NCBI GenBank assembly: GCA_904063045.1 | Contig: CAJFCJ010000010.1 | Location: forward strand, 1,054,001 to 1,118,000 | Direction of reading: 5' to 3' | DNA length: 64,000 nucleotides | Origin: Dimorphilus gyrociliatus | Taxonomy: Eukaryota; Animalia; Annelida | Part shown: positions 7,001 to 29,809 of the stretch, piece after piece | Numbering within the stretch: the first letter of the stretch is position 1 | Layout: every line of letters begins with the position of its first letter | Notes under the pieces: model-generated | What the model was told of the DNA's origin: nothing | The model's input: the letters and a program-made list of their open reading frames with translations, nothing else | Database searches by the model: none | Translations under genes and position numbers: made by a program

Positions 7001-10000
7001 CAATTAATATCTTTACTGTAGAATCAATAGTCATTCTCGATGTTTCCGTTACGTCTCGTGGTTGAAGATAGTCATCAGCATCAATTAGTTTTGTGGCTGT
7101 CGTTGAATTAACACTCATCCCCCTCATTAGTTCAACTGTACTATGTTCCTCTAATGGTAATTTCATAAGACTGTCTCCCTAAACATTTTAAGTAGATCGT
7201 TAGTTGTTTGAAAAGTAAATAATACAGAATAAATATTGCTTAATATTTTCATTAGAAACAAATATACGTAATTTAGTATACCTTTATCACAAGATATCTT
7301 CCTGGATCGACGCACATCTTGTTGAATATTTCACGAAGTTCTTTAAAACTAGGTCTACTATCTGCATCCAGCAACCAACATTTTATCATCCACATGTAAA
7401 CGTCGATAGTACAAATTTCAGGCTGTGGTAGTCTGTCTCCTCTTTCCAAGGCAAACGGTACACTCCTTGCTGGCATACCTTCGTAAGGTCGTTGACCATA
7501 AGTACATATTTCCCATATGGTGACACCTTAATTTCAAAGATTAAAAGAAAATTATTCTATGAAGTAATTTCCAAACGAAAAGAAAAAATCCTTTTTTCTA
7601 TTACCGTAACTCCATACGTCACTCTTGTGCGTAAATATTCTATGTTGGATACATTCTAAAGCTAACCATTTAATTGGCATCTAATTTGGGAAAAAAGAGA
7701 TATTTTTTTCTATAAACCAAGTGTCATTAATAAATGTTACAATTCTGTTACCTTTCCACCACCAGCTTTGTACTCTTCTTCATTTATATTTAGTAATTTT
7801 GCTAAACCAAAATCAGTAATCTTCACTAAGTTTGGTGAATGAACTGAAAGAGGAAAATGAAATAATAATTTTAAAATTGAAGGAAATATATCATAATTAT
7901 CTTTAGTTACCTAATACATTTCTTGCAGCCAGGTCTCTATGAACAATACCTCTTCCCTCAAGATATTGCATTCCCTAGATAATTTTAAATAGTTAATAAC
8001 ATTAAGTAAATTGTAGTTTAAACTGTTTGATTTATATTTATGTTTACCGTAGCTATTTGATGACACCAATTAAGTATTGCCTTTGATCCAATATTTTCTT
8101 TACTTCTTCTAATATAATCCAGTAAACTTCCATATGGCATAAGTTTTGTAATCATCATCATCTGCGATGCTATACAAATTCCTAAAATTTTTACACAGCA
8201 TTGATTATCAACAGAAGCCATAATTCTAGCCTCTTCCAAAAGTTCCTTGAAAAAAAAAACAAATTTTTTCTTTATTGATCTCTCAACAGAAGAACTAATT
8301 AATTTAAAATTTACAGTGCTCTGTTCAGGCGAGCTGTCCGTCAATACTTTAATTGCAACCAGAATTTTCAGATTCTCACCAGCCGGTGTCCATAAACCTT
8401 TAAATACTGTTCCAAACGCTCCACTACCAATTACTACACCTTTCTTTAATTCGCTATCTTTAATTAATCGAACGTGAGCCATGTCTGGATTAGCTCCTGT
8501 AGGATCTAGCGGTATAGTTTCCCCTTCCAATTTCTTTTCAAATTCCAGTCTAAAAATAATAAGTTATTATTGATTAAGCAAAAGAAAATAGGTTGTACAA
8601 AGATACCCTTAATAAATATTTTACAATATCCTCATATAAAAAGAAAAGCCTTTGTAAGCTAGAGAAGCATTTTTACCTCATTACTTAACATATATTGTAT
8701 ATAAATATACATATGTACAATAATAAAATTCGCTAAGAGATATAATAATTATTCGTGTTTTTACCTTCTAGCCTCAGTCTGAACTTTTTTCCTCCAAATG
8801 AAAATACCAATAGCAACAATAATTAATAATAAAAATGCAACAGTGACTCCTGCTGCTATTCCAATGGTTTTTTTCCTCCTTTTATCACTATTTATAAATA
8901 TATTTTATAATTAAAAACAAGGTGTTTTTGATCAATTTGAAAGAATTTCTTACTTTTGAATTTCTTCAATTTCAGTATCAGGCAGACATAACCATTTTGA
9001 TTTAATCGGCCCTCCAGTCTCATCTTTAACGTGACTCCATCCTTTCGGACAATCAGTAACGCATTCAAACTAGAAAAAAAAAGAAATATACCAATATTGA
9101 TAAAGCCGTCTTTTTAAATATAGAAAAAAAGGAAGAAACTATTTTAAGAAAATCTTTCATTTGCATAATAAATAGTCAAATTTCTACAAAGGTCAAATAA
9201 GAAGTCTGGCTTATTTGATTATCACCCTCTAAAAGCAAATGTTGAATAGAAAATGATTATGTTGACTAGAGAAATTTTATATTTATGCATAAAACTTTTC
9301 ATTACTTTTTCGTTATTATCATCGACTCTCTTTTTATAATTTTTACATTCTTTGCAATCAGCAGACGTTGATCCTTTACAACCGATACATGTAGTGTCGC
9401 ATTTAGAACACAATCTATCCTGTAGAAAGTAATCGTCATCACATTCCCAAACGCATTGTGACCCTTGTCTGAAATGCTTGCAATCAAGGCAGAAACCTGG
9501 TCCCTTTGCGCTGCAAGTGAGGCACGTAGGATGACAATGAAAGCAACTCTAGAAAAAAAGTCATTATATTAATTAAATTAGAAAAAGTATGTAATCAGAG
9601 CAATATGAAATGGAATATAAATTTGGTACATGTTTGCCCAGCATTGGATGATCGTGTTGTATTTTTATAGACACTGAAACTTTATCTTTAAAATATCCAA
9701 CTGGACATTTATAATTTTCCGGTACACATTTATCAACAGCAAATTTCTTGGTTAAAATTGCCATTTTACAGCTATTACATGCACCCATTCCAATATCTTT
9801 TCCCGGTCCAGTACAGCCATCTAAGATAAAAAAAAATCAATAGCAATTTATAAAATAGGATTGTCAATGACTACATAAAATGTATATGCGATATATATAG
9901 AGGGAGGCTCTACTTCCGGATTTATCTCAACTGCCAAGAAAAACGCTGCCAAGTGTACGGTAAACAAATGGAAATTTATATAGAGATATCAGAATTGTTT

Positions 10001-13000
10001 ACGACTGTCATTTTATACAAACTGTAAGAAATCACAGTAAACACTTCCGTATCCTACAGTTTGTTTTTATAATAATATAAAAAAAAGAAGGAGGATTTTC
10101 TTTTTGGATGGAATCTTTTTTTTCATTGTTTTCTGCTTTTATTATAAACTGCCTCGCGGAGAACGATAAAAAGTGAAGGTAATATTTTACGTTCTTTCGA
10201 ATTAAAAGACATAAATTCTTGCTAAACGCCTACACTTAGTAATAGAAAAGTTTTTTAATACTATATATACTAATAATATATATCTTCTAGTGAATAAATA
10301 ATTAAATAAGAAGTTTAGTGAGACAATCAGTAATTTTTAATAAATCTATATGTAAGTATAATATGTGGGTGTATATTCCTCAAACAATAACTGTCAACTA
10401 GAAATGTTTATCATTCAATCTATAGTCAAGGGATTATCACCCTTGTGACCTCTATCCCATAATTCTTTATCAACTTAAATCAAGTGCAAAATAATCGGTA
10501 GTATAATAAGCTTATAGGCTTTCTTTATCCTCTTTAGAAAATATAAGTTAAGAAAATAACATTTGAGATATGAGAGAAAAAAGAAGAGAACATTCTGTAC
10601 CATAATTTTTCAGTACAAGCTTTCTCATCTTATTAAAACAACCATGTACATGAATAATTCTATTTAAATAATTTGTATTTTAGCTATACTTAGAACATTC
10701 CTTATGTATTAAACAGTATTTTTTATAATTTATCACTAGATAAGACTACTGATAGCGCGTCAAATACTATAGATAAAGTGGCTGACTACTTTTAGATATG
10801 AATCATCTCCATTCTGTCAAACTATCCCTTATAAATTAACTAGCCCAATGAAAGAGTCGGTTTACCTGTACAATACTCGTAACAAGGCTGACATTCACTG
10901 TTGTTATCGGGATACATATTTGTCGGACACTTTTTAACGCATTTTGACAATCCAAAAACTTTTAGGGTTAGTATACAAGAATCACACTCTGTATCTTCTG
11001 GTCCTGAGCACCCATCTTTGCAGCCTTCGTGGCACTGTCTACACTCTTGAGCAGTATTATTTGTATACGTTGGAATTTTAGTGACGGCTATGGAACACGA
11101 TGAGATACATCTGAAACATTAACGTTGAATATTATACTCTTTATTTAAAAACTAATAGCAAAAGATTATTTCTATTACTTGTCCTTGAATTTGTAATTTC
11201 TACAACTTCCTACACAATTCTCCGGTCCAGGACCAATACAACCGTAAGTAGGATGACATTCGAAATCACATACGGCATTTTTAGATTCTAAACAAAGTAA
11301 AATATTTTAGCAGGCATAAATAATTGTTTTATAAGACATCCTCTTCTAATTTACTAACCGCAATAGGATTTTTTTGCATTGTTTTGGATATTAGTTTTGT
11401 ATCTATCGAGTCTAACAGTATCAAAGTATTTTAGAGATTGTTCAATGTAGCATAAATTAGGATTATTTGCTATAGTGATATTACAATCAACAGTTTGAAT
11501 ATTTTTCAAACCAAGATAGTTTAATTTCTTATTATTTGTAAAAGAAAATCGATGAAAAGCTTTTTTCAATTTCGGTAAATCTATTGTTTTCAAATTCTTA
11601 TTTCTAATAACATCAATTCCACGCCTGAAAGAAAAGGAATTGTAAATGAAGAAATAAAAGAAATATATAGATTTTTTAATTTTACTTATCATCAATTTAA
11701 AATTAATTTAAAAAGTCATTAACATAAGCTCGTTTGTCAAAAGACCTATTTAAAGAAGTACTTAATTTAATCATACCTAATAACTTCGAGATTTTTAAAA
11801 TGATCGAAATTTTTCAATGGTGTTTCAAAAACCATTATATATCCTTCTAGTTCTTTAATAGTTTCAAATATTTTAAAGTCTTCCTCTTTGAAAGGTATTA
11901 ATCCAGCACTGAAATATTTCATAAGATAGATATAGAGAAATCTTTATTTAATTTATATTACCTAGGTTTAAAACTCGATTCCAGAAAGTGTAGATCACCG
12001 CTGAGAATTGTACAGTCTTTGAAATCTTTGAAATCATCGAGTGTATTAAAACTCCGGTTGTGGGGTTTCTTGATATGACACTCTAAAATAAAACAAAAGA
12101 AAATGTCAAATCAATAATCTAATACATTACTGGAATAATGAAAAAATAAGCTCACTTTTAGGGCAAGGTCCATCGCATATTTCGCAAAAGTTAGTTCCAT
12201 CTTTCTGATGTGTACGCTTAGGGCAAGTTCGGGCGCAAGAATTGTCAAATTGTGAATGAAAGAGATAATCTATTAAAAATTTTACAGATTATTTTATAAT
12301 TTATGGATAATTGTTCATAAAATTACTAAATAGTATACTAACTTGGACATTTATCTAAGCAGTAATACCCCGCAAAATACTTTCCATCTGGATTTTTCTC
12401 ACGTTCATTGGTATATTGATTAATTTTCCATAGACTGGGACAAGTAGAAACGCAAGATTCACCGTTTCGAAAATTTTTACATGCCTGATAGATCATATTC
12501 TTTCTTTATAGTTTAATCATTTATAGTTTTATAGTAGAAACTTACATAGCAATCCGTATTTTTAGAAGTATGGCAGCCAGCAGCACAAGATGCATGACAG
12601 CATTCCTTGTTCGAATTACATCGAAGTGTTGCGCAACTTCGCGGACAGATGGTTTTTGTTACTAAAACGGAAAAGAATTAAAGAGACCTTCCGAGAAAGG
12701 AACATTTATTAATATATACTAACACTCTTGACAATGAGTTTTTTCAGGACCCCAGCAATGATTACTAGGACATTCACGATGACATTCTGCGATAGTGTTT
12801 AACTTCAATTAGCTCTATTATAAATTATTAACAAATATATTATATCTTACCGCGTTTAACGCAAGAATTAAAACCATTTTTAACATATTTCTGACTTGCT
12901 TCATTGAATATATCATTCCAACTGATTTTTTCTATAAAGCAAACTTCATACAAATAATTGTTGACGTACTGAATGTTGCCAGATTGTATTTCTATGCAAT

Positions 13001-14548
13001 AAAAGAAAAGAGGTATTCACAATGGTCAATTAAAGATATTTGTTCTCTAATGACTTACCTGTTAGTTTAGGAAGTATCAAATTTTTCATCAGAGATGAAA
13101 TTATAACAAGTGAATATTCTTCAGGCTTTTGACCTGAACTGGATATTTGGTTACGTAATGGATATCTAATAGCACCTCGAATAATTCGTAAATTTTTGAA
13201 AATAACATTTGTTTTCGGTAATTGCAGTTGAAAAATTAAAAGATATCCAGTTATTTCTTGTATAGAATCAAACATTGAAAAATCTGGATTATCTTCTTCC
13301 TTTAATCCTGATATCTCCAAATTGCCATCAATAATAACGCAATTTTTACCATTGCCATAATATTGTTTTAATGTTGAAAATTTATCGCTTGTAGATAGAC
13401 CATCAGCTGTCCCTTTGCAGACTGTATCAGGGAGGAGGGAAAAAAATGAAGAAGATATAATAAAAAATTTTAATTTTATATTGTTTTCTTATATAATTTA
13501 AATAAAAATTAATAAATAAAAACAACCATAGATAGATAGAATATTTGATAAAAGAAAAATTAGCCATAAAAATGTATACATCTATTTTTATAGATTCCCT
13601 TCCCTTTTTATTAAATCTGACAAACTATTAAGAAGTAGAAGATGGAAAAAAAATAGTGAATATAATAAATGATTGAACGGGAAGAATGGTTCAAATATGG
13701 TTTCATATTTCAATTATATTTTAGATGACAATTTCTTGCGAAATATTTCTTTTTTTTATATTAACATTAGCCATTTTGCTCTTGTTTACAAAACATTTAC
13801 AACTAGAAATTATATTGATATAGGAATTGGGAAACTGTCTCTACTGAATGATAGGATATGATAAGCTGCAATTAATTCCTGTAAACAAAAAAGTATCAAC
13901 CTAAAAATGGAATGAAATAGGAAACAAATGAACTTTATAAAAACAGGGGGAAATTACAACTTTTTTTTACAGTCATTTAACTATTTATAGTTAAAGGATA
14001 AATAATAAAAAATTAATCATATATCTATCTGCGTTTAATGAGTAATAATACGCATACTCAGTACACCTACACTATCTTATTGTAAAGAATTACTCTCTTG
14101 AATCTTTAAACAATTATTCGAAACTCTTCAACTTTTCGTTCATTCATAAAGGTTATATAGTATGTTCTATAAACTTTTATGATAGGTATTATATATTTAA
14201 TTAGATAGTTTTTATATAAATTTGACTTATAGTATAGACATAAAATTTTTTCTATTATTATTACAGTATTGTTAAAAAGGAATTGTTAGCTTATTTCTAA
14301 AAATAGAATAAGTTTCTAATTAATAATAAATTAGTAATTTTTATTTTTTATAAGTACCATGAAACATTCCATTTCATATAGTCCAAATTTTATGATTTGT
14401 TGCTCTATTATTTATAACTATTTAGACGTCTTTTAGGTAAAACGTTTTAGTTTGTCTACATTTTATCACCGCCTACATATACACTATTTATAAATATAGA
14501 TAAATTGTGTAGAATGAGTGCATGAAAGTGCATATATATACATAAATA

Positions 14549-14584
<36 letters not shown>

Positions 14585-17213
14585 TACATACGTTACCCAT
14601 TGATATTTAATCTTACAAAATTCTTAAACACGAATTATATACAATAAATGCGCAAGAAAGATAGAAATATCTTGCCTCCATTCCAATATTACATTACAGT
14701 ATTTTACCCTTAGCAAAGTATAATTTTTACGTATTTATACTGTATTATATAACCAGATAAATAATAATTAATATGCCATAACTGTATTTAAAAAACAAGT
14801 TTCTATTTATTTACAAGAAAAATACAAGTTATTATGAAAAAGGAAATTTATAAATGTACATGTAGAATTTTTATAGTACTAATAAAACGATAACTATTAC
14901 CACTATTCCATTATAATTGTTTCCTGTGGCGACTATTATTTATTATGCCATCTAGTTTGTGATTAATACATGTACAATTATACCCAATATCAAATAGATA
15001 GATATATAATATAGAATATGTTATATATCAAACTCTAACCTAGCTATATCATACGTGACTAAATAAACTTACTGTAAAAATTAGCTCACAGTACGCTGTT
15101 GCTTTAAGCCCAACGTAATTGGTAAGATTTATAGCTATAACAAGCAAAAAAATAACGAACATCTACTTTTACAGTCATTCTTTCTTTCTCTATCTATGCA
15201 ATTCCCTTTCTTTTTTTATCTATATAAGAAACATATCCTTTCTTCAGTCAGAGCCGAGAAAATTGGCATGTAAACCAATGTGGATAAAGCAAAGAAAAAA
15301 GATAAAACATGTGCAGAGAGTGTGTTCTCCTTTTCTATTAAGCCTAAAAGTTTTTATTATATAAAGAGATGAAGATAATTCGTACAATTGTAGTATTAGA
15401 TAAAGTCTTAAAAGATGCTCAAATATTGTTTAAAAGTAATTAAAAATGATAAATTTTCTAATAATAGTTTGCATCACAAAAAATACGTTACAGCAGTTCT
15501 TCTATCTCCCTTTTAATTATAAGGAAAAGTCAAGTTCATTTTAATATTTAACGACCTTCCAGAGTATCGTATTTTTTTAATACATATTTTCCATATGTTT
15601 GTGCCTGTAAAATGTATTTATACAAAATATTTTCAAACTATTTCGTACTCAGTTATCGAGTGAATTTGTATGTTATCCCCTACATTTTTAGAATTCTTTA
15701 ACAATATCTATTAATCTTGAGATATATAGGTTTTTTTTGCTAACTTTTAACCTAATAGGACAATCTAATAATATGATTTAGAAATAAAGGTCAAACGGAT
15801 TACATTATTGATGAAATTTAATTAAACTTCAACTGATTTTGTCCTACTAAATAAGAAATATTATAACTCTATACAGTAGTTAAACTGAATAATTTTCTGC
15901 TTATTAGACAAGATTTAAGTTTTGCGGTCATGCTTCATTGAATCATCATCGTATGCAATTTTTTGTAGAATTTATTGTATCGTATTTCGTTAAGCCTATT
16001 TGTTTCAAGTACTTGTTTATATTTAAAATACACCGCCCTTTTTTTTGGGAGAATTTAATGTTTTTTTTATTATTATTATTATCGTTATTCGGTCTTACAC
16101 ATTTTCCCCATCTTCCGGTTACTTAAGCAAAAAAATTGGTGAAGCTTAAATTAAAAATACTAATGTAGACAGTACAATAACAATACGATATTTTCATTCA
16201 ATACAGTAGAAAAAGTTGAAAAAGTTTCCCTAATTAACCAACTTAAAAAGAACATTACACCATTCATAAAGGGTTGATAAACAAACGTCTATTGCAACAG
16301 CGGTGTGTTTATACTCGAATTAAACAAGTGCAGCTTATTTATAAAAGAAGAGAACTTATAGCTAACGTGCTGGCATCAACCACTTGAAGGAAAAGAAAGC
16401 AACTTTACTAGAAAAGAAAATACAACATTTTCTACAATACTCCATTCATTTGTTTCCATTTTTGTATTGAAATTGGATATATGGATATACATATATATAT
16501 ATATATGCATATATCTATTTCTTAGTATACCTATTTAAATTGAATATTTTTAATATGTCAACTTAAAAGAAATAAAAATTAAAGAAGAAAAAAGTAAGGC
16601 TAATTAGCAATTTTAAAAAAGTTATGCATATTAATGCTTTTTAAAGTAGGAATTATTGTTTCTGCTTTAAAATTTATCGTTTTGTTTTTGGTAAGAATAG
16701 CCACAGCTGTTAACTTTGTGTGCAAAGTATTTTTTTTAAATAAACAAGGTTACACTAAAAAATGAAATGTTCTTATTTTTTGTTTTGTTTTAAAAGACGT
16801 GTAAAAAAAAAATATTAAAAAAATAACAGAAAAAACACCAAAATATCTATTGAAATAAAAGTATATAAAGTTAGACAAAGAAGAACAAAATATTTCTCAA
16901 ACCTCTCGTATCGTCCAAATGGGTAACTAGATGCATAACCAAATACAATTTATCAGCCTAACTCTTTTAATTTTATCTTTATAATTATATTAATTTTTCT
17001 TATTTAAATACAAGTATTAGCTAATTATTAATAAATAAAATAACGCTAAAAACATTTATTAATTAATTCAATATTATATCTAAGACTTTTTTTTTTAAAT
17101 CTAAGTAATATGTATGAAATTGGAAAGATAAAGAATAAAATACACTTACTTTCAACATCCGCAAATACTATAGAAGGCAATAAAAGGATTATTAAAACGG
17201 CAGCGATATTCAT
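4046..17213 (-). CDS. EGFR: Epidermal growth factor receptor (EGFR/ErbB receptor tyrosine kinase), 26 coding exons, about 1358 or 1395 aa depending on the exon 25 donor
   Basis: Exons (minus strand): 17150-17213 (signal peptide [18 protein letters not shown]), 13059-13421, 12851-12991, 12724-12786, 12546-12661, 12343-12484, 12156-12269, 11962-12082, 11777-11908, 11359-11624, 11179-11287, 10866-11110, 9630-9820, 9306-9548, 8954-9069, 8765-8887 ([26 protein letters not shown]), 8315-8549, 8048-8245, 7911-7974, 7752-7843, 7605-7680, 7282-7526, 7017-7178, 6807-6925, 5115(or 5004)-5245, 4046-4251. All junction phases match. L1/furin-like/L2/Cys-rich ectodomain; kinase motifs [34 protein letters not shown]; tail motifs RYSSEP and VENPEY. 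Confidence 0.97.
6515..6528 (+). promoter_or_regulatory. Putative CTCF-like site (GCGGTAGATGGCGTA) in EGFR intron 24
   Basis: Core AGATGGCG at 6519-6526 resembles the established CTCF consensus; the function is inferred. Confidence 0.35.
14552..14582. repeat. (TA)n microsatellite in EGFR intron 1
   Basis: Perfect TA run seen directly. Confidence 0.95.
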
Positions 17214-17285
17214 TGTTTTAAAAGTAGCATAACATAGATGAATGGTATAATTTCTTGTTAAGATAGTTCGAAATCTTGTTTTATC

Positions 17286-17445
17286 TTATATATACATATA
17301 TGTATATATTACGTATATACATCAATATATATATATATATAAAAACATATATATATATATATATATACGTATGTATTAATATATATACATTAATATATAT
17401 TTATGGAGAGAGAGGGAGAGAGAGAGGAAGAGAGAGAGAAAAAGA
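17286..17445. repeat. TA-rich and (GA)n low-complexity tract just upstream of the EGFR start codon (probable promoter or 5' UTR region)
   Basis: tatatata runs followed by ggagagagagggagagagagaggaagagagagag, 70-230 bp upstream of the ATG at 17213. Confidence 0.7.
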
Positions 17446-17829
17446 GTAGAGTAGGTTGATTGCGATGTGAAGTATATAATTCGTGGTGATCTGAAAGCAA
17501 AAAAAAGGGCAAAGTATATATCATATTTCAATTAATTAACCATATTTAATGAAAAGAAAAAGTAAAACTATAATACAAAACTGATGTTGGGTTTATAATA
17601 AATTATTTCTACTCTCAATCGTTTAATAATAGACCATTTTATCAGACGTATAAATTATTAATCATCATTTCTTCTAAACAAAACTTTTTAGCAATTCATA
17701 ATAGTGAAATAATTCATATTTAAAGTTTTTCTCCCTTCAACTACGTCATTTTACATTGCAGTAGCGAAAATTAATACTCTTGAACTAATTATATGTATTT
17801 AGATATACTAAATAATTCTATAACAATAA

Positions 17830-19920
17830 ATGACAAACGAGAATTCTACTATAAGGTAATATCGCCAAAAGAGAAAGTAAAGGCATAGTTGATAAATGTA
17901 CTAGCCGCCTATAAGAATTCATATAAAAGTGACCTTTGAATAATGATGATAGAACGAAACAATTACTTGTAATATATTTATTCTATGAGTTTTTATAAAT
18001 GGATATGTTTAGATATGGCAACTAACTTTCCCTATTTCTATTTATATATTATAAGTTCATAGCAAATATAAACTTTTATAAGGTATAAAGAGCATTAAAT
18101 ATAATTTTTATATGTCGTGCTAAAAAATAAAAGTTATATAAAAAATTGATTTGTAAAGAATTTCTCCATTTAAAAATTCTTATATTATTAAACAATTTAC
18201 TATTATTTGCCTTCTATTGAGTAAACACTTTCCGATGTTTGACAGTTGTTCTATGATTGAGAGAAGCTCTCTTCTACAACTCATTACGGTAAGTAATTAC
18301 CATAGTATTTATATTTTATACAATCTGATAAAATTGATTATTTAAACGTTCAAACCTTTTGCCTAAACGTTGAAGTTGAAGAGTAAAGAGACAACCTCTA
18401 GGCAACCATTATATCAAAAGCATCTATCATATAAAACAAACAATACGAACACGTAATGCCTATAAAAAGTTTGTCACTATTCTCTTTATGACCATAAAAT
18501 AGAGAATGAAAAGTGTTTATTGTTTATTAGAACAAGAAGAAGAAAAAAACAAAATATTCTTGCCTAAAGCTACAAATTGTAGTTTAGATATTGATGATGT
18601 TGAAAAAGAAAGCTTAGCTGATAAAATGAGTCTATGGGCTGAAGAATCAAGAGAGAAAAAAAACTCACAAAAGAAACAAACAAGAGTATTTGATAGAACT
18701 GCAGTGGTATGCAAAGTTTATTTTATAGATATATATGCTGTATATCCGTATACGATTAGTATCAGCTAAATTAGAAAGAGCTATAGTTTACTATTAAACC
18801 AGTATACGTATAATTAATCTATTGTCTACTCTTTTTGCTGTCTATCTAAACAATAGGTAAAAAATAAATTAAAATATGTTACTATAAATAACGCATTACT
18901 CAATCTTTCAATCAAGTAAAAGACTATAATAGCAGGAATGAAAAGAATAGAATGTTTTCTTGTAAAATTATGTAAATAGTAAAACAATTTATGAGAAAAG
19001 GAAAAAGCGAAAAGATAGATCGAAAAAGGGAGAAATGATCTAGATAAAGAGATGGTGATGATAAAGGAAGGAAAATAAAAGATTCTGTATTCTCATCTTA
19101 AACTGCAAATTGAAAGTGAAATGTTTTTCCCTAGATAAACAAAAAAAAAACCTAGACTATATATTCATTCCCCATGTTAATTCTTTTTAAACTATAAAAC
19201 TCTTATACATATCTTGCAAATTTATTCACTTTTTAAATTTGTTAAGTTAATGAAATTGTCATAAACAATTCATTTAATGTATGGTTTTATAAGGATAAGT
19301 GAAAAATAGGAAAATTCCTCTCTTGTTTGGGCCACTAAATCAAATAGAATATTTAAATATGAAAAGATTCATACTAATAAGAAAGAAGGAAGTCAAAGAC
19401 AAATAAGAATCTTGTGCAAGCTTTTTCCATTTATCATTTAGCATCGGTTTACATTGTCTGTGAATGTCTAAACCTTTTTCAATAAGGTTATTTGTGCTAT
19501 ATGGATTGAAAACAGACGATGAATAGGACAACTATGATATCTGTTTAGATATACGAGCAAAGGAATAGATGATCGAAAATAGAAATTTGAAACCCTTGCC
19601 AACTGATAACGAATTAGGAGACAAGATAACAATGCTCTTACTCAACATCTAAACTTGAACACTCCAGTGACATTTTTGCCGGATGTTGCCTATCAAGTGA
19701 ATAGAAATCTAGTTCAAATTTCCTTTTTATCTTTAAAAATATTGTTTTATGTCGTTTTTCTTTAGTTCGTTCACTCAACAACGCTCGTCTAATTTCTTTT
19801 ATCCCTCTCATACACACACACACACACATACAAACACACACGTATACACAATCCTTTTATTATAATAGTAGTTTATTTCTTCCTCTATAGGACGTCTTAC
19901 AATCTGAACAAACTCTTTAA
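17830..19920 (+). CDS. Putative small orphan protein (about 100 aa), 4 exons: 17830-17855, 18246-18288, 18503-18706, 19891-19920
   Basis: Donors AG|GTAATA, ACG|GTAAGT and GTG|GTATGC and acceptors tttgacag, aaaatag and ttcctctatag give a phase-consistent chain MTNENSTISCSMIERSSLLQLITRMKSVYCLLEQEEEKNKIFLPKATNCSLDIDDVEKESLADKMSLWAEESREKKNSQKKQTRVFDRTAVDVLQSEQTL*. No family recognised. Confidence 0.4.
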
Positions 19921-20365
19921 GCAGCACTCTCTAGCATACATGCTAAAAATGCTCTCAATGTCTTTCGTACAATTTCATTGTTTATAGATAAGAAATGGAG
20001 GATATAAGTATAGTTAGGTTACAGATTAGATCATTTGTTTATAATAAATTTTATATTTTATCGAATGTCACAATATTATTAAATATTATATGAAATAGAC
20101 AACTCACCTTTTCTTGTTAAAAACAGTATAAACGATTATATTTGTAAAAAGTTAAAATATTTGTGAACGAATACAATTTTGAGAGAAAATCCAGTTTAAT
20201 CAATTGTTATCCGAAAGAAATAGGCCACCAAGTCAATATACTGCACTTACTGCTTGATAAGTCATAGTATGTAATATGAATTAGGTAGGCTTAGAAACGC
20301 TGAATTGTAATAATGCTTAAGGTCTTGCTGAATATTTCGACTCGTATGAGCGTAGGCCATAAACA

Positions 20366-20394
20366 TTACGTGACGTCACTACTTCTCAACCAAT
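20366..20394 (+). promoter_or_regulatory. Perfect CRE palindrome (TGACGTCA, 20371-20378) followed by a CCAAT box (20390-20394)
   Basis: Motifs seen directly in a locally GC-richer intergenic patch; the target gene is unknown. Confidence 0.35.
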
Positions 20395-20642
20395 CAACGT
20401 TGATTGTATCATTTGGGAACCATTATGCCAGCGGTCCTATATTTTTTGTATTTTTGTTTTGCTACTTTGAGTCTAGGGAATAGGTTTTGAATCGATCCAC
20501 TCACAAATATCTATCGATTATATTTGCGGGATAGCTCTCATTAAGTGCAAATACTTCGATTTTTTAAATCCAATATTTAGAACTAATCTTCAAAACTGTA
20601 TTAAATATATAGGTGTCGCAATTCTTCAATATTAAATATAAA

Positions 20643-20656
20643 GCGCCATCTGTATT
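20643..20656 (-). promoter_or_regulatory. Putative CTCF-like site (AGATGGCGC on the minus strand)
   Basis: gcgccatct at 20643-20651. Confidence 0.35.
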
Positions 20657-23117
20657 ATAATATATAAAAACTAGTTATGAAGATTAACTACTTAGAAAGC
20701 AGAAGAAATAGAGAATGACTTTATGAGAAGAATGTTAAGAACATTCCTCTTGAAGTTGAATTTATTTGAAAATTAAGATAAACTAAATCAAAAACAGATA
20801 TAACAATATTCCAGACATATGATTAATCTGTCTTACATAAACTTGCTCATCTTTCTCTTTCTCTTTCTCTCTCTCTCTCCCTCTCTTTTAATAGAATACA
20901 ATTATTCTACGTACAATGAAAAGGGTATTTTCCCATTCTGAACTGTACAAATCAATCACTTACATTTGAAAACGAAAGTAAAAAGAAGAAAAAGAATATT
21001 TTTCCTATTATCAAATAAATAAATCATCTTGGTTGAAAATCTAGGAAAATAGGAAACTCTTAAGATAAATAATTAACAGAATGTCTATTAAAGAGTTCCA
21101 AGTTAATGAAAATAACGAGGTATAAGGACAACTATTTTTAAATATAGAGATCAGTGCAAAAATGCAACAACAGCTAAAATAAAACTGATTACATAGCTAA
21201 TTTCTGTAGGGGCTAATTGTTTGGTTTTGATAATTTATCAATTATAATACTATCAATATCTCACACACGTATTCTGAATATTATAAAATATAGAAAACAT
21301 GACTTTATAGTATATCATGTATTTTATTAAAATGTATATACTGTATATATATATGCTGTATATATAAATTTATATTTAGATTATCCAGTAGGGGGAAAAA
21401 CTACATAAACAGTAAAATCTATATTCACTCTTGAATAATAGGATTATCTAGTTGGTAACTGAACTATGCTCTAAATTATAGCTGTCACCTTTAAGAGCAT
21501 GAATTGAAAGAAAATAGTTGGCCCTTACAGTATGAATCTAGTGTTCGCCTTCATTTTTAGTTTTAGTAGTGCTCTAGCAGTTTGTTTTTTGAAGAAAACC
21601 CTCCTCTGATGCACAATAATTCCACTTTAAGAGTAATCTTTAAAGAGAATTGTTTTCTCTTGTTTGAGATAGTGTTAAGTTAAAATCAAACCTTTTGAAT
21701 TAATTTAATTGTATCTGGAAAGGTGACATTATTCTAAGTTAAATTTATGAATACTGTACCATTTACAATAAAATTCTCCTTCTAATAATATTACCTGATG
21801 ACTAAATGTATATATCACTAGATCACATAGTACTTGTTGACTAAAATACATGACAGGAGCCTATTGCCAATAACATACTAACGTTCTTAAAATGTTTAGA
21901 TAACACTTTTATCTATCAAAACTTTATAAAAGAAGAGTCCTAAATTAGATATTGCAAAGTTCCTTTCGAGCAAAAGAATTTAATGAAGTCTTTAGTAAAT
22001 GTAGAATTCTGTAAATAGCATAGATTTTAAAAATAGCTTGATAGTTTAAATACTATGGACATATAAATAGATATACTTAGATATAAATATGCATATCATA
22101 ACTCCAAGTTTCAAATGATTGTTCATAAATTTTCCACGTTTCTTCACTCCAAAAGTATGCAATTTAGCATGGAATATTTAATCAGAATATTCTAGTAGTT
22201 GAGTTGTTAGAAGTTTTCGGCGGTATGGCATAAAAATATCTTGTCAATTACAAGTAATTCTTAAGTAACATGTCAGCAAAAATTGCGGAAAACCAATTAT
22301 TTGCTTCCCAAAAAAAGGTACCAAATTTGCTTTTACATATATCTATTATAGTAAGCTATATTCTCCAATTGAAAACTCTTTGCTCATACTTAGCATAAAC
22401 TGTAGACATGTTTATAAATAAACTTTGGAATATATTGTGTCTTCTTATGGTTTTTTACATTAATTTATTGTCTTGAATTTGTGTAAATGATGAATTATTT
22501 ATAAAAAAAAAAGTATATCTAAGCGTAGACACCCTGAGAACAAATTTTTGAGACAATCGATTTTAAATTTGCTGAATAATTTCACGGTAATGACTTTTAA
22601 CAATAATCTTTAATACCTTTTCAAATGAAATGGTTAAATATTGGTTATTTATTTATAGAATTCTTTTTTAAAAATAATCCCTACCAGCGATTTGTATAGT
22701 TCATATTTTTTTGTCATTGCCTTATTAATCTTATTGTATGAAAAATATGAAAATATAGTTTATCTCTTTTCTCTCTTTCTCTCTTCTTTTCTCTTTTTTA
22801 TGATAAATATTTATTATGAAGATAGGCGTTAATGTAAGATACGACGATTGGTTGATTACTTTAATTGAAAAAAAGAAAAATAATCGGATAATTATGAAAT
22901 TTAGTTTTCAATTGTAGTAAAATGTATTATAAATGAAATATTCAGCTAATAATACTGTAACTAAAGTTCTTTAAAAATACAAGTTAACGCATATTTCATT
23001 ATACGATAAATACAGTAGACAATTATTATTATTATACTTTCGTTAATATCACGAAATCAGGCTACATATCTTTTAAACATTACCAAGTTTTAGTATATAA
23101 TTTATACATTCTCTCTT

Positions 23118-23161
<44 letters not shown>
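23118..23161. repeat. Compound (CT)n(AT)n microsatellite
   Basis: Seen directly. Confidence 0.95.
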
Positions 23162-23166
<5 letters not shown>

Positions 23167-24184
23167 TAGGATATTTTAGGAAAAGAATTCGTGAGAATAA
23201 AGAACGAACTTATTGTCCTACTTCTGTGCCTCTAATTTGCGAATTTTTTCATTATAATGAGTATATTATAAAACAGTAAAATTTATTATTGTCAAGTTTT
23301 TTCAACATTAACACACACCAAATATAGAAGTTACTTTTTCAAGTTAAAGAATTCTTTATTGTTTTCATCAAATCAAATCTAAAATTGTCATTCTTTCCTA
23401 TAAAAGATTTACTTGTGAGCTTATTCTATTCATAGAAATTCGTCTATTAGATTAGTACATTATTGTATTTTCTGTTCTAATTTGATCGTTTGGTAGGCGA
23501 GTTTGTAGTCATGTTCGTATAGTTAGGACAAAGTTTAAAACTATTTATAATTGATTGAGATATCAAAATCAATACTATATACTTGTATATATAGTATATT
23601 AACGGTAAGTACATTACTATTTCTTTTAAATGTAGCATTTATCTTATTAATGTTATCTTAACCATTGTATGAAAAGAGAAGTGAATGCAAATTCTGAATT
23701 CTGACATATTCAACGATAATTTCAATTAACCACGGAAATTTGTTTTTACAATTCTTTTGACGGAGAGAAACTTTATTTATAGAACTCAAATTATTCTTGC
23801 TACTGAATTATTAATTTGTTAAAGCTCATTAATTGTTTTGATCTTTTATTTAAGTTTATTTTTCCTGCTAAAGATGGTCCAAGAACTCTTTTAAAACAGA
23901 ATATTAATATTAAACCACTCCTTTAAAAGTATACACTGCTAACATCAGGAAGATATTCGGAGAAAAAATATTCATATATATATAATATGTATATATATAT
24001 ATTTGTTGATATAGATAGATTGAAAGAAGTGGGATAAAGGAAGCACTTAGCATCTCTACCACGCACTGGGCTGTCATTGGTAAAGATAAACATAAATAAA
24101 TTAACATTTCATAATCTTTTTGATGTATATAAACAGTTTTGTCTTCCTGAAAGTAGTACTAACACTTCTGTAAGGAAGATAGTT

Positions 24185-24428
24185 ATGAAGTTCTATATAC
24201 TCATACTGTTATTTATTATTGTAATAAACTGCAATGTTTATGGGTCCACTTTCGATAAAGATTATATAAGTCGTTTACTTAAAATAAGAAATGGCGACAA
24301 TGATTCACAATTGAATGAGAATAAAGTAAGTTAATCTTGGAATTTGTTTAAAATTATTAGTTTGTGGAATATTGAAAAAGTCAAATAAATTTTCGGCATT
24401 TATGTATATAATGTATATCTTTAGAAAG

Positions 24429-24468
<40 letters not shown>

Positions 24469-25150
24469 GAACAACTGGACTAACTGGACTATATAAATTA
24501 TTATATTATATTTTAATTGACAAAATAGTAACAATTACTCAATAACATGTTCTAAGATAATAACAATAACAAAGGAAATGAAAATAATAAGTCACGAAGA
24601 GACAAGATATGAATTAGATACATATTTGTATACGTGAACGTATACGTGAAAAATGAAAAATCGAGTAATTAGTTGCTCAAATATATATATAGGACTATTT
24701 CTTAAAGAAGGAAATCTTAAAGAATATAAAGAATATAAATAAATGCTATTTATAACTGATGTTAGTTTTTATATAATAAATAATAACCTAACAAATTATT
24801 TACGTAACAATTTAATACACATTATACAATTGTAAATCATTTGAAAAATTTAAAAGAAATCTTATACAGTACATATAATTATCTCATTTCAGGTTATTCT
24901 AAGGGATGCTCAGGATATGATTGGGAACTCACCTTGGAAAGGTTACTCAGAAACCCTCAAGAAAAAAATGGATCTTCTAGGTTTAATTCTAAAACGAAAT
25001 TTAAAGAAAGCATCTCAGAAACGTATGTATGATTTAGGTATGAATTATGATTTACAATTTAGAGGCATTAAAATATCTATAGTATCTTTTCTTTTCCATA
25101 TAATCACTGTAGGACTTTGCATTTGGAAAGCCTGCCCACCGGAAAGATAA
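24185..25150 (+). CDS. Neuropeptide precursor of the somatostatin/urotensin-II-related type, 3 exons (24185-24325, 24893-25022, 25113-25150), 102 aa; predicted mature peptide LCIWKACPPE(R)
   Basis: Signal peptide MKFYILILLFIIVINCNVYG; donors AAA|GTAAGT (phase 0) and AAAC|GTATGT (phase 1); acceptors catttcag and cactgtag. The spliced C-terminus is ...KKASQKR LCIWKACPPER*: a dibasic KR site followed by a 6-residue Cys ring CIWKAC, comparable to vertebrate urotensin II CFWKYC and the Aplysia UII-like CLWKVC. Confidence 0.88.
24432..24464. repeat. (AG)n microsatellite in intron 1 of the neuropeptide gene
   Basis: Seen directly. Confidence 0.95.
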
Positions 25151-26377
25151 AATATATATAGATATCTTCACACAAATTGGCTTTAACTTTCACAAGTAGA
25201 ACAAAAAAAGAAGTTTTCTGTAATATTTTTAATCGATTTATAACCTAAAATATATTTTTAGAAAGTTATTTTTTTGAATGTGTTGGCCAATTCGTACAAA
25301 CAAACAAAAGGAATACAAGTCTCAGCATTGTATGAATTATTTATAATATATTAAAAGAAGAATATTTTAGATATAGGATCTTGTTTGATAATTTCTGTAC
25401 GCTGTACAATAAACTTATTCTAAATGTTCTATTATAATTTCAAGCAAAAGACCCTTCCCCATCCCAACTTTTTTCCTGTTTCTCGACCTCTATTTTAACC
25501 ATCTTTACATTTTCTTTTGTACATAAATGAAGAGACTCAATACTATCTTCTTAGTTCTTCATAACTTTACAAAAAAGATATGTAGAATGGATAAATAATT
25601 CAGTTTTTTCGTTTACGCATATAGTATTATTCCTTTTTATAGTATTATATCTTTTTCATATTTTTGCTTTGATTGCAACAAAAATAGCTATATTTAATAT
25701 TTCCCATCGAAACATTAAAATTAAGTTCTTAATAAGAGACACAAAGTAACTAATAGACTGTGACGAACCATCATAAATGATTAGTATATTGAATATTGTC
25801 AATACATCAACAGTTCTGTTTTATCATATTTATATGTGTCATAAGATCAAGGTATTATGAATATAAGTAACTTTTACAAAGAATATTCTATTGAGAGAAA
25901 AGTATATTTATATATTGGATAGTGCAGAATATTTGACACAATGATTTACTACCGCTTTACCTATCATTAATGTATAAAATGACTAGAGTTGCTATGCAAT
26001 CTCACTATGTACCTATTATATAAATATTTTCAATCTTTAATTCTTTAATTCTTCAATTTACCCGTATCTTTCATTCTGGATTTCTTTCTTCTCTTTCTCT
26101 CTTTCTATCTCCTCTCTACCCATTTCTCTTTTTAACATTTTTCTTAGAAAATAAGGCAAATACTTAGTAAAATGGAAAATCTAATATTGTTTCAGACCTA
26201 AGTTAATACTTTTTGAATCGAAAAGTTAAGCTATAAAAAATACAACTTACTCTAATCTGATAGTCTTTTTTAACGAAATAAGGACATCAAAGCATTTGCA
26301 TTTCTGTTATCGTTTTTTCTCTCCTCGAAATACATACTTGTTTAAGACTGATAGATCAACAACAGAAAGCTTATACT

Positions 26378-29300
26378 ATGTCAGGTATGCTTATTAATAA
26401 TAGAAGGGAGATTAATATATTATATATTAATTTACAGTATATATTTGTATATATTAATAGTACTGTATATATATATACTTTCTACTGTATATAGAAGCTA
26501 TAAAGTGGCCGTGTAAAATGAATTTAAAACTTAAAAAAGATAACAGATAATGGTGTCTTGGTAAGAATTAATTTATTTTCTATCAGAGGCCTTAAAACTG
26601 TCTTATAGATTACTTTTATACAGTTAAACTGTGTTTATAAATAGAAAGAAGAATCGACGGAGCGGTATTTTGCAATTTTTCATAGATGTACTATATATAT
26701 ATAGTTATAATTAATGATTATCATTCATCACGAAGATGATGGGTAAATTTTGTGTTATATCTATTTTTAGAAAAAAGTCTTAAATCTTGTTTCTGTTTCT
26801 TTCTTATAACTTTTTTTTTGTTTTAAACATTACATCTGTGATAATAAAAGTAATACTATTAAAATAGTAAATGTAAATTATATAGTATCAGTTTAGTTAG
26901 AATCTGAATAGACTTCTCCATGTTTTACGTTAAATAGAATAATGTTCTCAATTGCTATCTCTTTTATCAAAAAAGAAAAATATAAATTAGAATATACAAC
27001 ACCAACTGAAAATAGTTCATTCATTTAGATTAAAGATGGCGCTTTATATTACTTATACTCCATTTCGTGTAGTGAAGTACGACGACAGTTTTTTTTAGCT
27101 AAAAAGCAACAATAGCAGTTTAATTCTTACTCTTCTATAAATAGATGATGGAAAAATCATTAAAAAAACCGACATTTATGTAAATAGACAAAAGGCATTT
27201 TAAGTTTAATAATTTCATTTTTTATAAAGCTGAACTATAGGCATCACTATCTATAAATAGTATTTAGGTGATATGAATCATCAAAAAATATAAAAGAAAG
27301 TTAAAGTGTAAGTAATGGATGCCAAAAGGGTGGAAGGTACATACGAGTGGAATATCCTATTGCAGCATAAAGACATTTTACAGTTTAATAGCTCATTAAA
27401 TATTGAGTACTTAGGTAAAATTTCTAAAAGTTGAGTACCAATATAGATGTAGTACTTTACAAAATCTCTAGTTTACTTTTTAATACGTAGGGGTGAAAGT
27501 TTTTAAAATTAATAAATTAAATGTAAAGTTTTTATATCGTTTAATCTCAATTATCTTAATCGATTCTTATGTTCATTATATATTCTGTATTAGACAAGAT
27601 ATCGATCTTAATGCTAATAATAGTTCAAATCGATTGATATTTCTCCTATAGCAAATAGACCTGAATGTTGAACCTAATAGATTCTCTGATTGACGCGCTG
27701 TGTTATTATATGAACATTAAAATTCACTTCTAGAACAGAGCGAACGTATTCTTAGGGAAGACTCTCAAGTTCGTAACACGATGCAAGGTCAAAGAGTAAT
27801 AGTCAATCGAGACATTGAAACACTGCAGCACTTAGAGGAATCCTATCCCAGAATAGAGAGAAAGAAAAAATTCCAAGAGATCGTTGATTATACAAAAAAG
27901 CAATGTTGTTGCAGTAGAGGAAAGGCTATTGATAAAACTTTATCTTTCTTTCCTTTCATATATCTACTACGTGGATATTCTTTGAAGTCAGACTTAATAA
28001 TGGATATAATTGCTGGTTTAAATATCGGTACTGTGCACATTTCACAAGGTTTGGGTTTTGCCCTTTTGACATCAGTTCCAGCTATTTATGGCTTATATTC
28101 TTCCTTTTATCCATTACTAATTTACTTCTTTTTTGGTTCCTCCAAATATGTATCAATGGGTACTATGGCTTTAATAAGTATTATGTTAGGTTCAGTTGTT
28201 GATAGAAAAATCGAAGATTCCGATGTTTTTATACGCTATCAAGGTATTTTTTATTAAATAGAACCCTAAGTTAAAATTGGAACTTCATCTACTTACAATT
28301 TGAACAGCATCGAATAATTCGGCAACCTTAGAAAGTGAGTTAAATTGTGCAAAAGTTCAAATAGCAATGGGTGTTACATGCGTTGTCGGCATTGTTCAAG
28401 TGGTACTATGCCTTTTAAGAGGAGGATTTATAACAAATTTCATGTCGAAACCACTAATTAGAGGCTTTACTACGGCTGCTGCAGTCCATATTATAACTTC
28501 TCAAATTAAATCTTTTCTTGGAATCGAAATTAAAAGACATGATGGATTATTTAAGATTCCAATGACATATTATGAGATTTTCAAGAACATTAAAAAAACA
28601 AATCTTGCTGACTTTTTAATAGGTTCAGCTTGTTTTTTTGTTCTTATGTTTATTAAACAAGTTATCACTCCTCGAATAAAGAAAAGATTTAAGAAATGCC
28701 CTCCTCTTCCAGCGGAGCTAATTGTTATGGCAGTTTGTACAGGAATAAGTTACAAAATCAATTTTAATTCGAAATATTCTGTAAGTATAATTGGAGACAT
28801 TCCAAAAGGAATACCAAGACCTGAAGCACCTTCATTAAGAATCATGAAAGATATTATACCAGATGCTGTTTTGATAGCGTTAATAAGTTTTATAGTATCT
28901 ATATCTGTAGCAAAGCTCTTTTGTGAGAAGTCGTCCAGCAAAGTTGATGCTAATCAAGAGCTGTTTTCTTTGGGTTTAATCCATATAATTGGATCATTTT
29001 TCTTTAGTTTTGCAGGAGCAGCAGCACCGCCCAGATCCATGTTAAATTTCTCTTATGGTAGATCACAAATAAGTAGTTTAGTATCAGCTGTTATCGTACT
29101 TTTAACAATGTTATGGTTATCTCCTTTATTCGCTTCGTTAACCAAGAGCTGTCTGGCTGCCATAGTTATAGTGGCAATCCTACCACTACTACTTCAGTTT
29201 AAAGATATCTATGATTGGTTTGAATTAAGCATGTTAGACTGTTTTAACTGGTTAATAGCTTTTTTAACCTCAGTTTTCCTTAGTCTTCCTTACGGTCTAA

Positions 29301-29809
29301 TAATAGGAATTTCTAGTAGTACCTTAACAGTTCTGCTACAGCATTTTATGAGCTCCGTCAGCAACCTGACAATAGCAATTGGACCTGATATTCTTCTTGA
29401 CACCAAAGTTAACTGTATACAAAAAAGTTGTACATCAATGCGAATCATTCAAGTAAATTCCCCAATTTTATTCATTAACGCTGAAAAGATACTAAAAGAA
29501 GTAAAGAGTGTAATTTACGATATGGAAAATTACGTAACGGAAATGGAGAAAAAGTATCTGATTATAAACAGTGCTGGAATAACTAATATAGATATATCAG
29601 GAATTGGCTGCTTAAAGTCTATCAGAGGAATTTGTAAAGATAGTAAAATAGAATTATATTTTTGCTGTATAAATCAAAATATCTTGTATGCTGTTGAAAA
29701 CATTATGGATTTTAAGCAACTTTTATATCCTTCTTTACAGGACGCTATCTCTCAATGTGAAAGTTATGAAAAGAGATACGCAGATGATTTTAATAGTAGT
29801 TACTTGTAG
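26378..29809 (+). CDS. SLC26/SulP-family anion transporter (prestin-like) with C-terminal STAS domain; exons 26378-26384 (or alternatively 27315-27336), 27734-28243, 28308-29809; about 672 aa
   Basis: Family motifs DIIAGLNIGTVHISQG, YGLYSSFYPLLIYFFFGSSKYVSMG, FMSKPLIRGFTTAAAVHIITSQIK and DANQELFSLG; STAS motifs SPILFINAE and IDISG. A 64-nt phase-1 intron at 28244-28307 joins the two ORFs. The first micro-exon is ambiguous: both ATGTCAG|gtatgc and ATG..GAAG|gtacat are phase-compatible. Confidence 0.93.
27030..27044 (+). promoter_or_regulatory. Putative CTCF-like or YY1-like site (AAGATGGCGC)
   Basis: agatggcgc at 27034-27042. Confidence 0.3.

What the first reader, a model, noticed from the sequence alone, without database searches (positions are those of the whole stretch)
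24185..25150. Hidden somatostatin/urotensin-II-related neuropeptide precursor (KR|LCIWKACPPER)
A 102-aa prepropeptide is visible only after splicing three short exons: signal peptide, spacer, KR cleavage site formed across the last splice junction, then a C-terminal disulfide-ringed peptide with the Trp-Lys pharmacophore (CIWKAC). It parallels urotensin II (CFWKYC), the Aplysia UII-like peptide (CLWKVC) and cone-snail consomatins. Protostome members of this system are poorly characterised and such small genes are often missed by annotation. The Ala in the ring and the PPER tail may be lineage-specific.
Basis: partly seen in the sequence, partly recalled or inferred. Interest (0 to 1): 0.85.

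Follow-up and report, generated by a model that had tools for sequence, protein, structure and literature searches.

The report
Annelid somatostatin/urotensin-like neuropeptide gene
The three-exon gene is really there and encodes a small ring-shaped signalling peptide. It belongs to the somatostatin/urotensin-like family already described in molluscs and annelids, reportedly including this worm, so it is genuine but ordinary.

Summary
Exons 24185-24325, 24893-25022 and 25113-25150 (+ strand) join through the only two strong donors in the locus and the two best acceptors. They give a 102-aa precursor: signal peptide, spacer, KR split across the last junction, then LCIWKACPPER and a stop.

It is not chance. 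A bare C.WK.C ring is expected about 54 times in a 73.8 Mb genome of this composition, but C[ILV]WK.CPP only about 0.006 times. Decoy upstream sequences almost never give such a precursor.

The core CIWK-CPP matches 7 of 8 residues of Ct-SSRPL1. That is the Capitella peptide shown to activate its receptor (Koch et al. 2022). The layout also matches the family's canonical gene: three exons, a phase-0 then a phase-1 intron, ring in exon 3. Ten related terminal exons found in metagenome contigs all carry a phase-1 acceptor just before the ring.

Koch et al. report three such genes in Dimorphilus gyrociliatus, only one of which keeps intron 2. This locus may be that gene. Earlier notes of this scan flag four further candidates on other DNA of this genome. 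One of them was followed up and called real but ordinary.

The species name comes from earlier scan notes and was not checked here.

The parts
24126..24133 (+). TATA-like box TATATAAA, 52-59 nt upstream of the ATG (inferred promoter element)
   Evidence: Read. TATA-like strings are common in DNA of 27% GC, so this is weak evidence.
24185..24325 (+). Exon 1 coding part (47 codons): signal peptide plus the start of the proregion. Ends at donor AAA|gtaagt, phase 0.
   Evidence: This is one of only two strong donors in the locus.
24185..24244 (+). Predicted signal peptide MKFYILILLFIIVINCNVYG, with Val at -3 and Gly at -1 before Ser21
   Evidence: Judged by a hydrophobic-core heuristic and the -3/-1 rule; no dedicated predictor was available.
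24326..24892 (+). Intron 1, 567 nt, phase 0, GT..AG. Contains an (AG)16.5 microsatellite at 24432-24464.
   Evidence: GC is 0.23 against 0.33 in the exons.
24893..25022 (+). Exon 2 (130 nt): proregion with basic sites KKK70-72, KR81-82, KK85-86 and Lys90, plus the first base of the Arg91 codon
   Evidence: Acceptor is ttatctcatttcag, donor AAAC|gtatgt, phase 1.
25023..25112 (+). Intron 2, 90 nt, phase 1, GT..AG. In frame and free of stops, so it reads through as the 77-aa ORF 24917-25150.
25113..25150 (+). Exon 3 coding part: last two bases of Arg91, then LCIWKACPPER and TAA
   Evidence: It has a phase-1 acceptor, as do ten related terminal exons.
25115..25147 (+). Predicted mature peptide LCIWKACPPE(R), with a Cys93-Cys98 disulfide ring holding the Trp-Lys pair
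   Evidence: Compared with Ct-SSRPL1 and apUII. Processing is inferred.
25350..25413 (+). Candidate polyadenylation signals ATTAAA (25350) and AATAAA (25408), implying a 3' UTR of about 200-260 nt
   Evidence: Inferred.

Best explanation
This is a functional gene for a precursor of the somatostatin-and-related-peptide-like (SSRP-like, 'invertebrate urotensin II') neuropeptide family.

Inferred steps, none shown here:
- The 102-aa prepropeptide enters the secretory pathway through a 20-residue signal peptide.
- A prohormone convertase cuts after Lys90-Arg91, and perhaps also after Lys85-Lys86, which lines up with the KR site of a relative.
- Cys93 and Cys98 form a disulfide, giving a six-residue ring that presents Ile-Trp-Lys.
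- A carboxypeptidase may remove the last Arg.
- The product, LCIWKACPPE(R) or the longer ASQKRLCIWKACPPE(R), would be released from neurons. It would act on a class-A GPCR orthologous to Capitella Ct-SSTL1.

Shown here: the gene model, its non-random nature, the near-identity of the ring and tail to a ligand known to activate its receptor, and the shared intron phase.
For: - Gene model with the only strong donors and the best acceptors.
- Exons richer in GC than introns.
- Chance estimates far below one per genome.
- Core CIWK-CPP is 7/8 identical to Ct-SSRPL1, pQASSGAQICIWKVCPPTPW, which activates Ct-SSTL1 at 13 nM.
- Aplysia apUII is a mass-spectrometry-verified disulfide peptide at the C-end of a 112-aa precursor.
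- The canonical family gene has three exons, phase-0 and phase-1 introns, and the WK loop in exon 3. That is exactly the layout found here.
- Ten terminal exons in metagenome contigs encode CIWK[VI]CPP behind a phase-1 acceptor. In L064 the recovered exon 2 runs from a phase-0 start to a phase-1 end (...ASKR QASS|G) and rebuilds the published peptide type.
- Run X2 holds 0.34 of the sampled words of 24100-25300. That is about what a fully spliced mRNA would hold (0.32-0.39 by my count), though X2's library kind is unknown.
Against:
- No sequence homologue by word search or by phmmer against 1.84 billion representatives. That is expected for so short a conserved part.
- The proregion shows no evident similarity to L064's.
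- The tail lacks the C-terminal Trp and the Gly/Ser N-extension usual in protostome members.
- Ala replaces the Val/Ile seen in the ring of the relatives.
- The species assignment rests on earlier scan notes, not on a test made here.
Confidence: 0.8

Rival explanations
1. It is a real duplicate of an SSRP-like gene that is silent or decaying: an intact-looking but unexpressed paralogue. The working ligands would be made by the other loci of this genome.
For: Four other candidate loci are noted in the same genome. This copy has a shortened tail without Trp and a shortened N-part. No RNA evidence was obtained.
Against: The reading frame, signal peptide, both splice-site pairs, the dibasic site and both Cys are intact. 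Exons keep a higher GC than introns. RNA run X1 and run X2 hold parts of the stretch.
Confidence: 0.1
2. It is a chance arrangement: a random C.WK.C string near a stop, joined on paper to unrelated open stretches by permissive GT-AG choices.
For: With lenient GT..AG rules, 1592 models reach the ring in the real locus. Paper splicing is therefore very permissive. About 54 bare rings are expected per genome.
Against: C[ILV]WK.CPP is expected 0.006 times per genome. Strict models with a dibasic site arose in 0 of 1500 decoys and 1 of 1500 Markov sequences. The intron phases match the family.
Confidence: 0.03
3. It is a secreted SSRP-like peptide used outside the nervous system, for example a glandular, defensive or reproductive secretion. 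This would parallel the recruitment of the family into cone-snail venom.
For: The family has been recruited to venom in Conus. The tail is atypical. Nothing here shows the tissue of expression.
Against: Endogenous members in molluscs are specific to the nerve ring or to neurons. The ring is of the conserved signalling type rather than the fast-diverging toxin type.
Confidence: 0.06

Closest known systems
Annelid SSRP-like peptides, e.g. Capitella teleta Ct-SSRPL1 (Koch et al. 2022, PMC9048919)
   Same: C-I-W-K-x-C-P-P core (7/8 identical). Peptide at the C-end of a small precursor. Three exons with phase-0 and phase-1 introns. Ring in exon 3.
   Different: Ala instead of Val in the ring. The tail is PPER-stop rather than PPTPW followed by RR. 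KR lies one residue before the ring, so there is no pGlu/Ser/Gly N-extension. Exon 3 starts 5 nt before the Cys codon rather than 11 nt.
Aplysia californica apUII / Conus signalling SSRP-like 1 (Romanova et al. 2012, PMC3493602; Koch et al. 2022)
   Same: L-C-[IL]-W-K-x-C-P. A precursor of about 100-112 aa with the peptide at the C-terminus. In Aplysia the disulfide was verified by MS, and long and short processed forms both occur.
   Different: The mollusc peptides have 20 residues, with an SGGMS N-part and an AAPWL[IV]S tail. This one has 10-11 residues, or 16 if cut at KK.
Vertebrate urotensin II / URP
   Same: A six-residue ring C-x-W-K-x-C at the C-end of the precursor. The size of the short form (10-11 aa) is close to UII.
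   Different: Vertebrates have an aromatic Phe before WK and Tyr after it, where this peptide has Ile and Ala. Their gene structure differs, with additional phase-1 introns. Orthology is inferred from the literature and was not tested here.
Allatostatin-C (protostome) / somatostatin-14
   Same: [quoted passage not shown]
   Different: The AstC loop always has six residues between the Cys and no WK. The somatostatin loop has 10 or more. This peptide has four residues with WK, so it is not an AstC.
Consomatins (cone-snail venom)
   Same: The same exon/intron plan and the same WK ring.
   Different: Consomatins are venom-gland toxins under positive selection. Nothing suggests a venom role here.

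Membership tests
Protostome SSRP-like (somatostatin/urotensin-like) precursors, as defined by Koch et al. 2022 | Cys loop with four residues between the Cys, containing the Trp-Lys motif | tested here: met
   CIWKAC at residues 93-98.
Protostome SSRP-like precursors | Aliphatic residue (I/V/L) before WK | tested here: met
   Ile94.
Protostome SSRP-like precursors | Preprohormone layout: N-terminal signal sequence, canonical basic processing site, peptide at the C-terminal end | tested here: met
   Hydrophobic 20-aa leader, KR90-91, and the ring 4 residues from the stop. The signal peptide was judged by heuristic only.
Protostome SSRP-like precursors | Three exons, a phase-0 then a phase-1 intron, first intron longer, WK loop in exon 3 | tested here: met
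   Introns of 567 nt (phase 0) and 90 nt (phase 1). The same phase-1 acceptor occurs in ten relatives, and exon 2 of L064 runs from phase 0 to phase 1.
Protostome SSRP-like precursors | N- and C-terminal extensions: several Pro and a single Trp in the tail, Gly/Ser in the N-part (described as common, not obligatory) | tested here: inconclusive
   Pro-Pro is present. There is no Trp and no Gly/Ser N-part if cleavage is at KR90-91.
Protostome SSRP-like precursors | Transcribed and spliced; expressed in the nervous system | not tested
All that exists is word shares of 0.12 (RNA run X1) and 0.34 (run X2, kind unknown).
Protostome SSRP-like precursors | The peptide activates an SSTL-type GPCR | not testable with these tools
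   Shown only for Capitella, in the paper.
Allatostatin-C | Loop of exactly six residues between the Cys, without WK | tested here: not met
   The loop has four residues and contains WK.

The most novel reading that the evidence does not exclude
[quoted passage not shown] It would be an unreported paralogue in a family of at least five loci in a miniaturised genome. A new KR at the splice junction and loss of the Trp tail would have trimmed its product to the size of vertebrate urotensin II (10-11 residues). That would be an independent shortening which might change receptor preference.
Probability: 0.35. Interest if true: 0.3.

Novelty: already known. Interest (0 to 1): 0.18.

Why it matters
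The finding adds a well-supported gene model for a small neuropeptide gene that open-reading-frame lists miss. The gene keeps the ancestral three-exon plan in a species where two paralogues have lost intron 2.

Its use is practical:
- completing the neuropeptide catalogue of a miniature annelid;
- providing a short natural analogue (no Trp tail, Ala in the ring) for structure-activity work on SSRP-like receptors.

It does not change the picture of somatostatin/urotensin evolution drawn in 2022.

Tried and rejected
- **Word-based protein search** with the 85-aa read-through of exon 2, intron 2 and exon 3 found no candidate.
- **phmmer** of the same query against 1.84 billion representatives found nothing.
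- **Exact exon-3 DNA** in metagenome contigs found nothing.
- **Supplements of Koch et al. 2022** and of its preprint are not held, and 'CIWKAC' occurs in no held paper. Identity with a published Dgy gene could therefore not be checked.
- **Findings look-up by sequence** came back blank.
- **Ab initio upstream exon models** in the related contigs were spurious and I discarded them. Only exon 2 of L064 was recovered convincingly.
- **The idea that the two downstream GPCRs are the receptor.** They are mutual paralogues. Their matches to solved structures are weak: TRH, opioid, galanin and SST4 receptors at 45-49 bits. A word-based search gave only unnamed hits of 26-28% identity. At TM3 position 3.32 they carry Gly and Ser; from my own knowledge, SST, UT and opioid receptors carry an Asp there. 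I do not support this idea.

Full report
**1. Observation**

- Exon 1 (24185-24325, 141 nt) starts at an ATG and ends AAA|gtaagt, phase 0.
- Exon 2 (24893-25022, 130 nt) follows ttcag and ends AAAC|gtatgt, phase 1.
- Exon 3 (25113-25150) follows ctgtag and reads GA CTT TGC ATT TGG AAA GCC TGC CCA CCG GAA AGA TAA.

The joined CDS is 309 nt: 102 codons plus a stop. The product has a 20-residue hydrophobic leader with Val at -3 and Gly at -1. It has a spacer with basic sites at 70-72, 81-82 and 85-86. KR90-91 follows, with the Arg codon split by intron 2, and then LCIWKACPPER.

**2. More than chance?**

Paper splicing is permissive. With any GT..AG allowed, 1592 models with a signal peptide reach the ring in the real locus. 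So I asked for strict sites.

Between the ATG and the ring there are only two GT[AG][AT]GT donors, at 24326 and 25023. Both are the ones the model uses. The two acceptors it uses have the highest pyrimidine counts. Exon GC is 0.33; intron GC is 0.23 and 0.24.

I placed the ring behind 1500 decoy upstream stretches from the same window.
- Any strict model arose in 13 of 1500.
- A model with a dibasic site within 12 residues of the ring arose in 0 of 1500.
- With second-order Markov sequence that last figure was 1 of 1500.

From the window's own trinucleotide frequencies, a bare C.WK.C is expected about 54 times in 73.8 Mb. C[ILV]WK.CPP is expected only 0.006 times. The genome size is taken from the abstract listed.

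**3. What it is**

Earlier notes of this scan name the genome as the annelid Dimorphilus gyrociliatus. I could not verify this independently. The 24-32% GC and tight gene spacing are compatible with it.

Koch et al. 2022 (PMC9048919) define protostome SSRP-like peptides by these features:
- a WK motif in a four-residue Cys loop;
- an aliphatic residue before WK;
- Pro-rich tails;
- a gene of three exons with a phase-0 and a phase-1 intron, the signal peptide in exon 1 and the WK loop in exon 3.

The locus meets each of these except the common, non-obligatory Trp in the tail and the Gly/Ser N-extension.

The Capitella ligand shown to activate its receptor is pQASSGAQICIWKVCPPTPW, with an EC50 of 13 nM on Ct-SSTL1. 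The present peptide shares CIWK-CPP with it. Aplysia apUII' is SGGMSLCLWKVCPAAPWLIS. It sits at the end of a 112-aa precursor, and its disulfide was verified by MS.

**4. Relatives found with the tools**

Most are chance hits in bacterial DNA. Ten look like animal terminal exons.
- Five read ag|G[CT] AQI CIWKVCPP[TS]PW RR ... stop (L010, L050, L064, L074, L093).
- Five read ag|[GC]T x-x-x-R-I CIWKICPPSP[TK]WG stop, or SPAF stop (L006, L017, L022, L023, L060).

In all ten a pyrimidine-rich YAG acceptor lies 11 or 17 nt before the Cys codon, which means a phase-1 intron. In the window it lies 5 nt before, also phase 1.

In L064 I recovered exon 2: cag|NNANKLL...HIASKR QASS|G gt. It starts in phase 0 and ends in phase 1, with an intron of 356 nt. 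Joined to exon 3 it gives QASSGAQICIWKVCPPSPW, the published Capitella peptide with one Thr-to-Ser change. That validates the acceptor choice.

Aligned on the intron, the KR of L064 falls where the window has KK85-86. The window's KR90-91 is an additional site at the junction. The second group of relatives also has Arg two residues before the Cys (RR in L006), so cleavage next to the ring has precedents. The source organisms of these contigs are unknown.

**5. How it most likely works**

All of these steps are inferred from the family.
- The signal peptide is removed.
- A convertase cuts at KR90-91, possibly also at KK85-86, giving a short and a long form as in Aplysia.
- Cys93 and Cys98 form a disulfide.
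- The terminal Arg may be trimmed.
- The peptide is secreted from neurons and acts on an SSTL-type GPCR.

There is no Gly before the stop, so no amidation is expected.

**6. What is missing**

I have no RNA-level evidence. I sent nothing from those places to any search tool afterwards.

The run search gave an RNA run X1 holding 0.12 of the sampled words, and a run X2 of unknown kind holding 0.34. By my count, a fully spliced mRNA reaching 25300 would hold 0.32-0.39 of the words. So 0.34 is suggestive but proves nothing.

Sequence searches found no homologue. That is expected when only about ten residues are conserved.

**7. Novelty**

Koch et al. state that D. gyrociliatus has three SSRP-like genes and that two of them lack the second intron. 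The present locus keeps it. It is therefore a good candidate for the third, canonical gene.

The supplements are not held, so I cannot prove identity. The scan notes four further candidate loci on other DNA of this genome. One of them (s1-080577) was followed up and called expressed, spliced and ordinary. Another (s1-080683, 1441 nt) may also have more than one intron.

I put about 0.6-0.65 on this locus being already published and about 0.35 on it being an unreported paralogue. Either way the kind is known.

**8. Surroundings**

- A sulfate permease (SLC26) gene lies about 2.6 kb downstream, at 27781-29806.
- A receptor tyrosine kinase with Receptor-L domains lies on the minus strand at about 8018-13320.
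- Two paralogous orphan class-A GPCRs lie 17 and 27 kb downstream. Their best matches to solved structures are weak and mixed.
- At TM3 position 3.32 these GPCRs carry Gly and Ser (read). From my own knowledge, somatostatin, urotensin and opioid receptors use an Asp there to bind the ligand's basic group. I found no support for a ligand-receptor pair.

**9. Verdict**

This is a real, well-formed member of a known neuropeptide family, in a species where the family has already been reported. Interest is low.

Noticed in passing
window 42122-44092 (+) and 52594-53640 (+): Two paralogous orphan class-A GPCR genes lie 17 and 27 kb downstream of the peptide gene. They are 42% identical over TM1-4; one is split by an intron and the other is intronless. 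They match TRH, opioid, galanin and SST4 receptors only weakly (45-49 bits). Position 3.32 is Gly or Ser, not Asp.
   Followed up: partly
L010, L050, L064, L074, L093; L006, L017, L022, L023, L060 (exon coordinates): Ten public metagenome contigs carry terminal exons of animal SSRP-like genes (CIWKVCPP[ST]PW-RR and CIWKICPPSP[TK]WG). This is presumably host or eukaryote DNA assembled within metagenomes. L064 also holds exon 2. The source organisms are unknown.
   Followed up: partly
window 25023-25112: Intron 2 is 90 nt, in frame and free of stops. A transcript that retained it would still end in the ring peptide, with 30 extra residues after KR. By my estimate the chance of an open 30-codon stretch here is about 0.1, so this may mean nothing.
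   Followed up: no
window 27781-29806 (+): A sulfate permease (SLC26, Sulfate_transp plus STAS) gene in at least two exons lies about 2.6 kb downstream of the peptide gene.
   Followed up: partly
window 8018-13320 (-): Exons of a receptor tyrosine kinase: a kinase domain at 8018-8527 and Receptor-L domains at 11354-11692 and 13033-13320. It looks insulin- or EGF-receptor-like.
   Followed up: partly
window 13400-27700: About 14 kb holds no ORF of 70 aa or more except at 15119-15364, at 18506-18769 and in the peptide gene itself. That is long for a genome described as compact. It may hold small-exon genes or regulatory DNA.
   Followed up: no
window 24432-24464: A perfect (AG)16.5 microsatellite lies inside intron 1.
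   Followed up: yes
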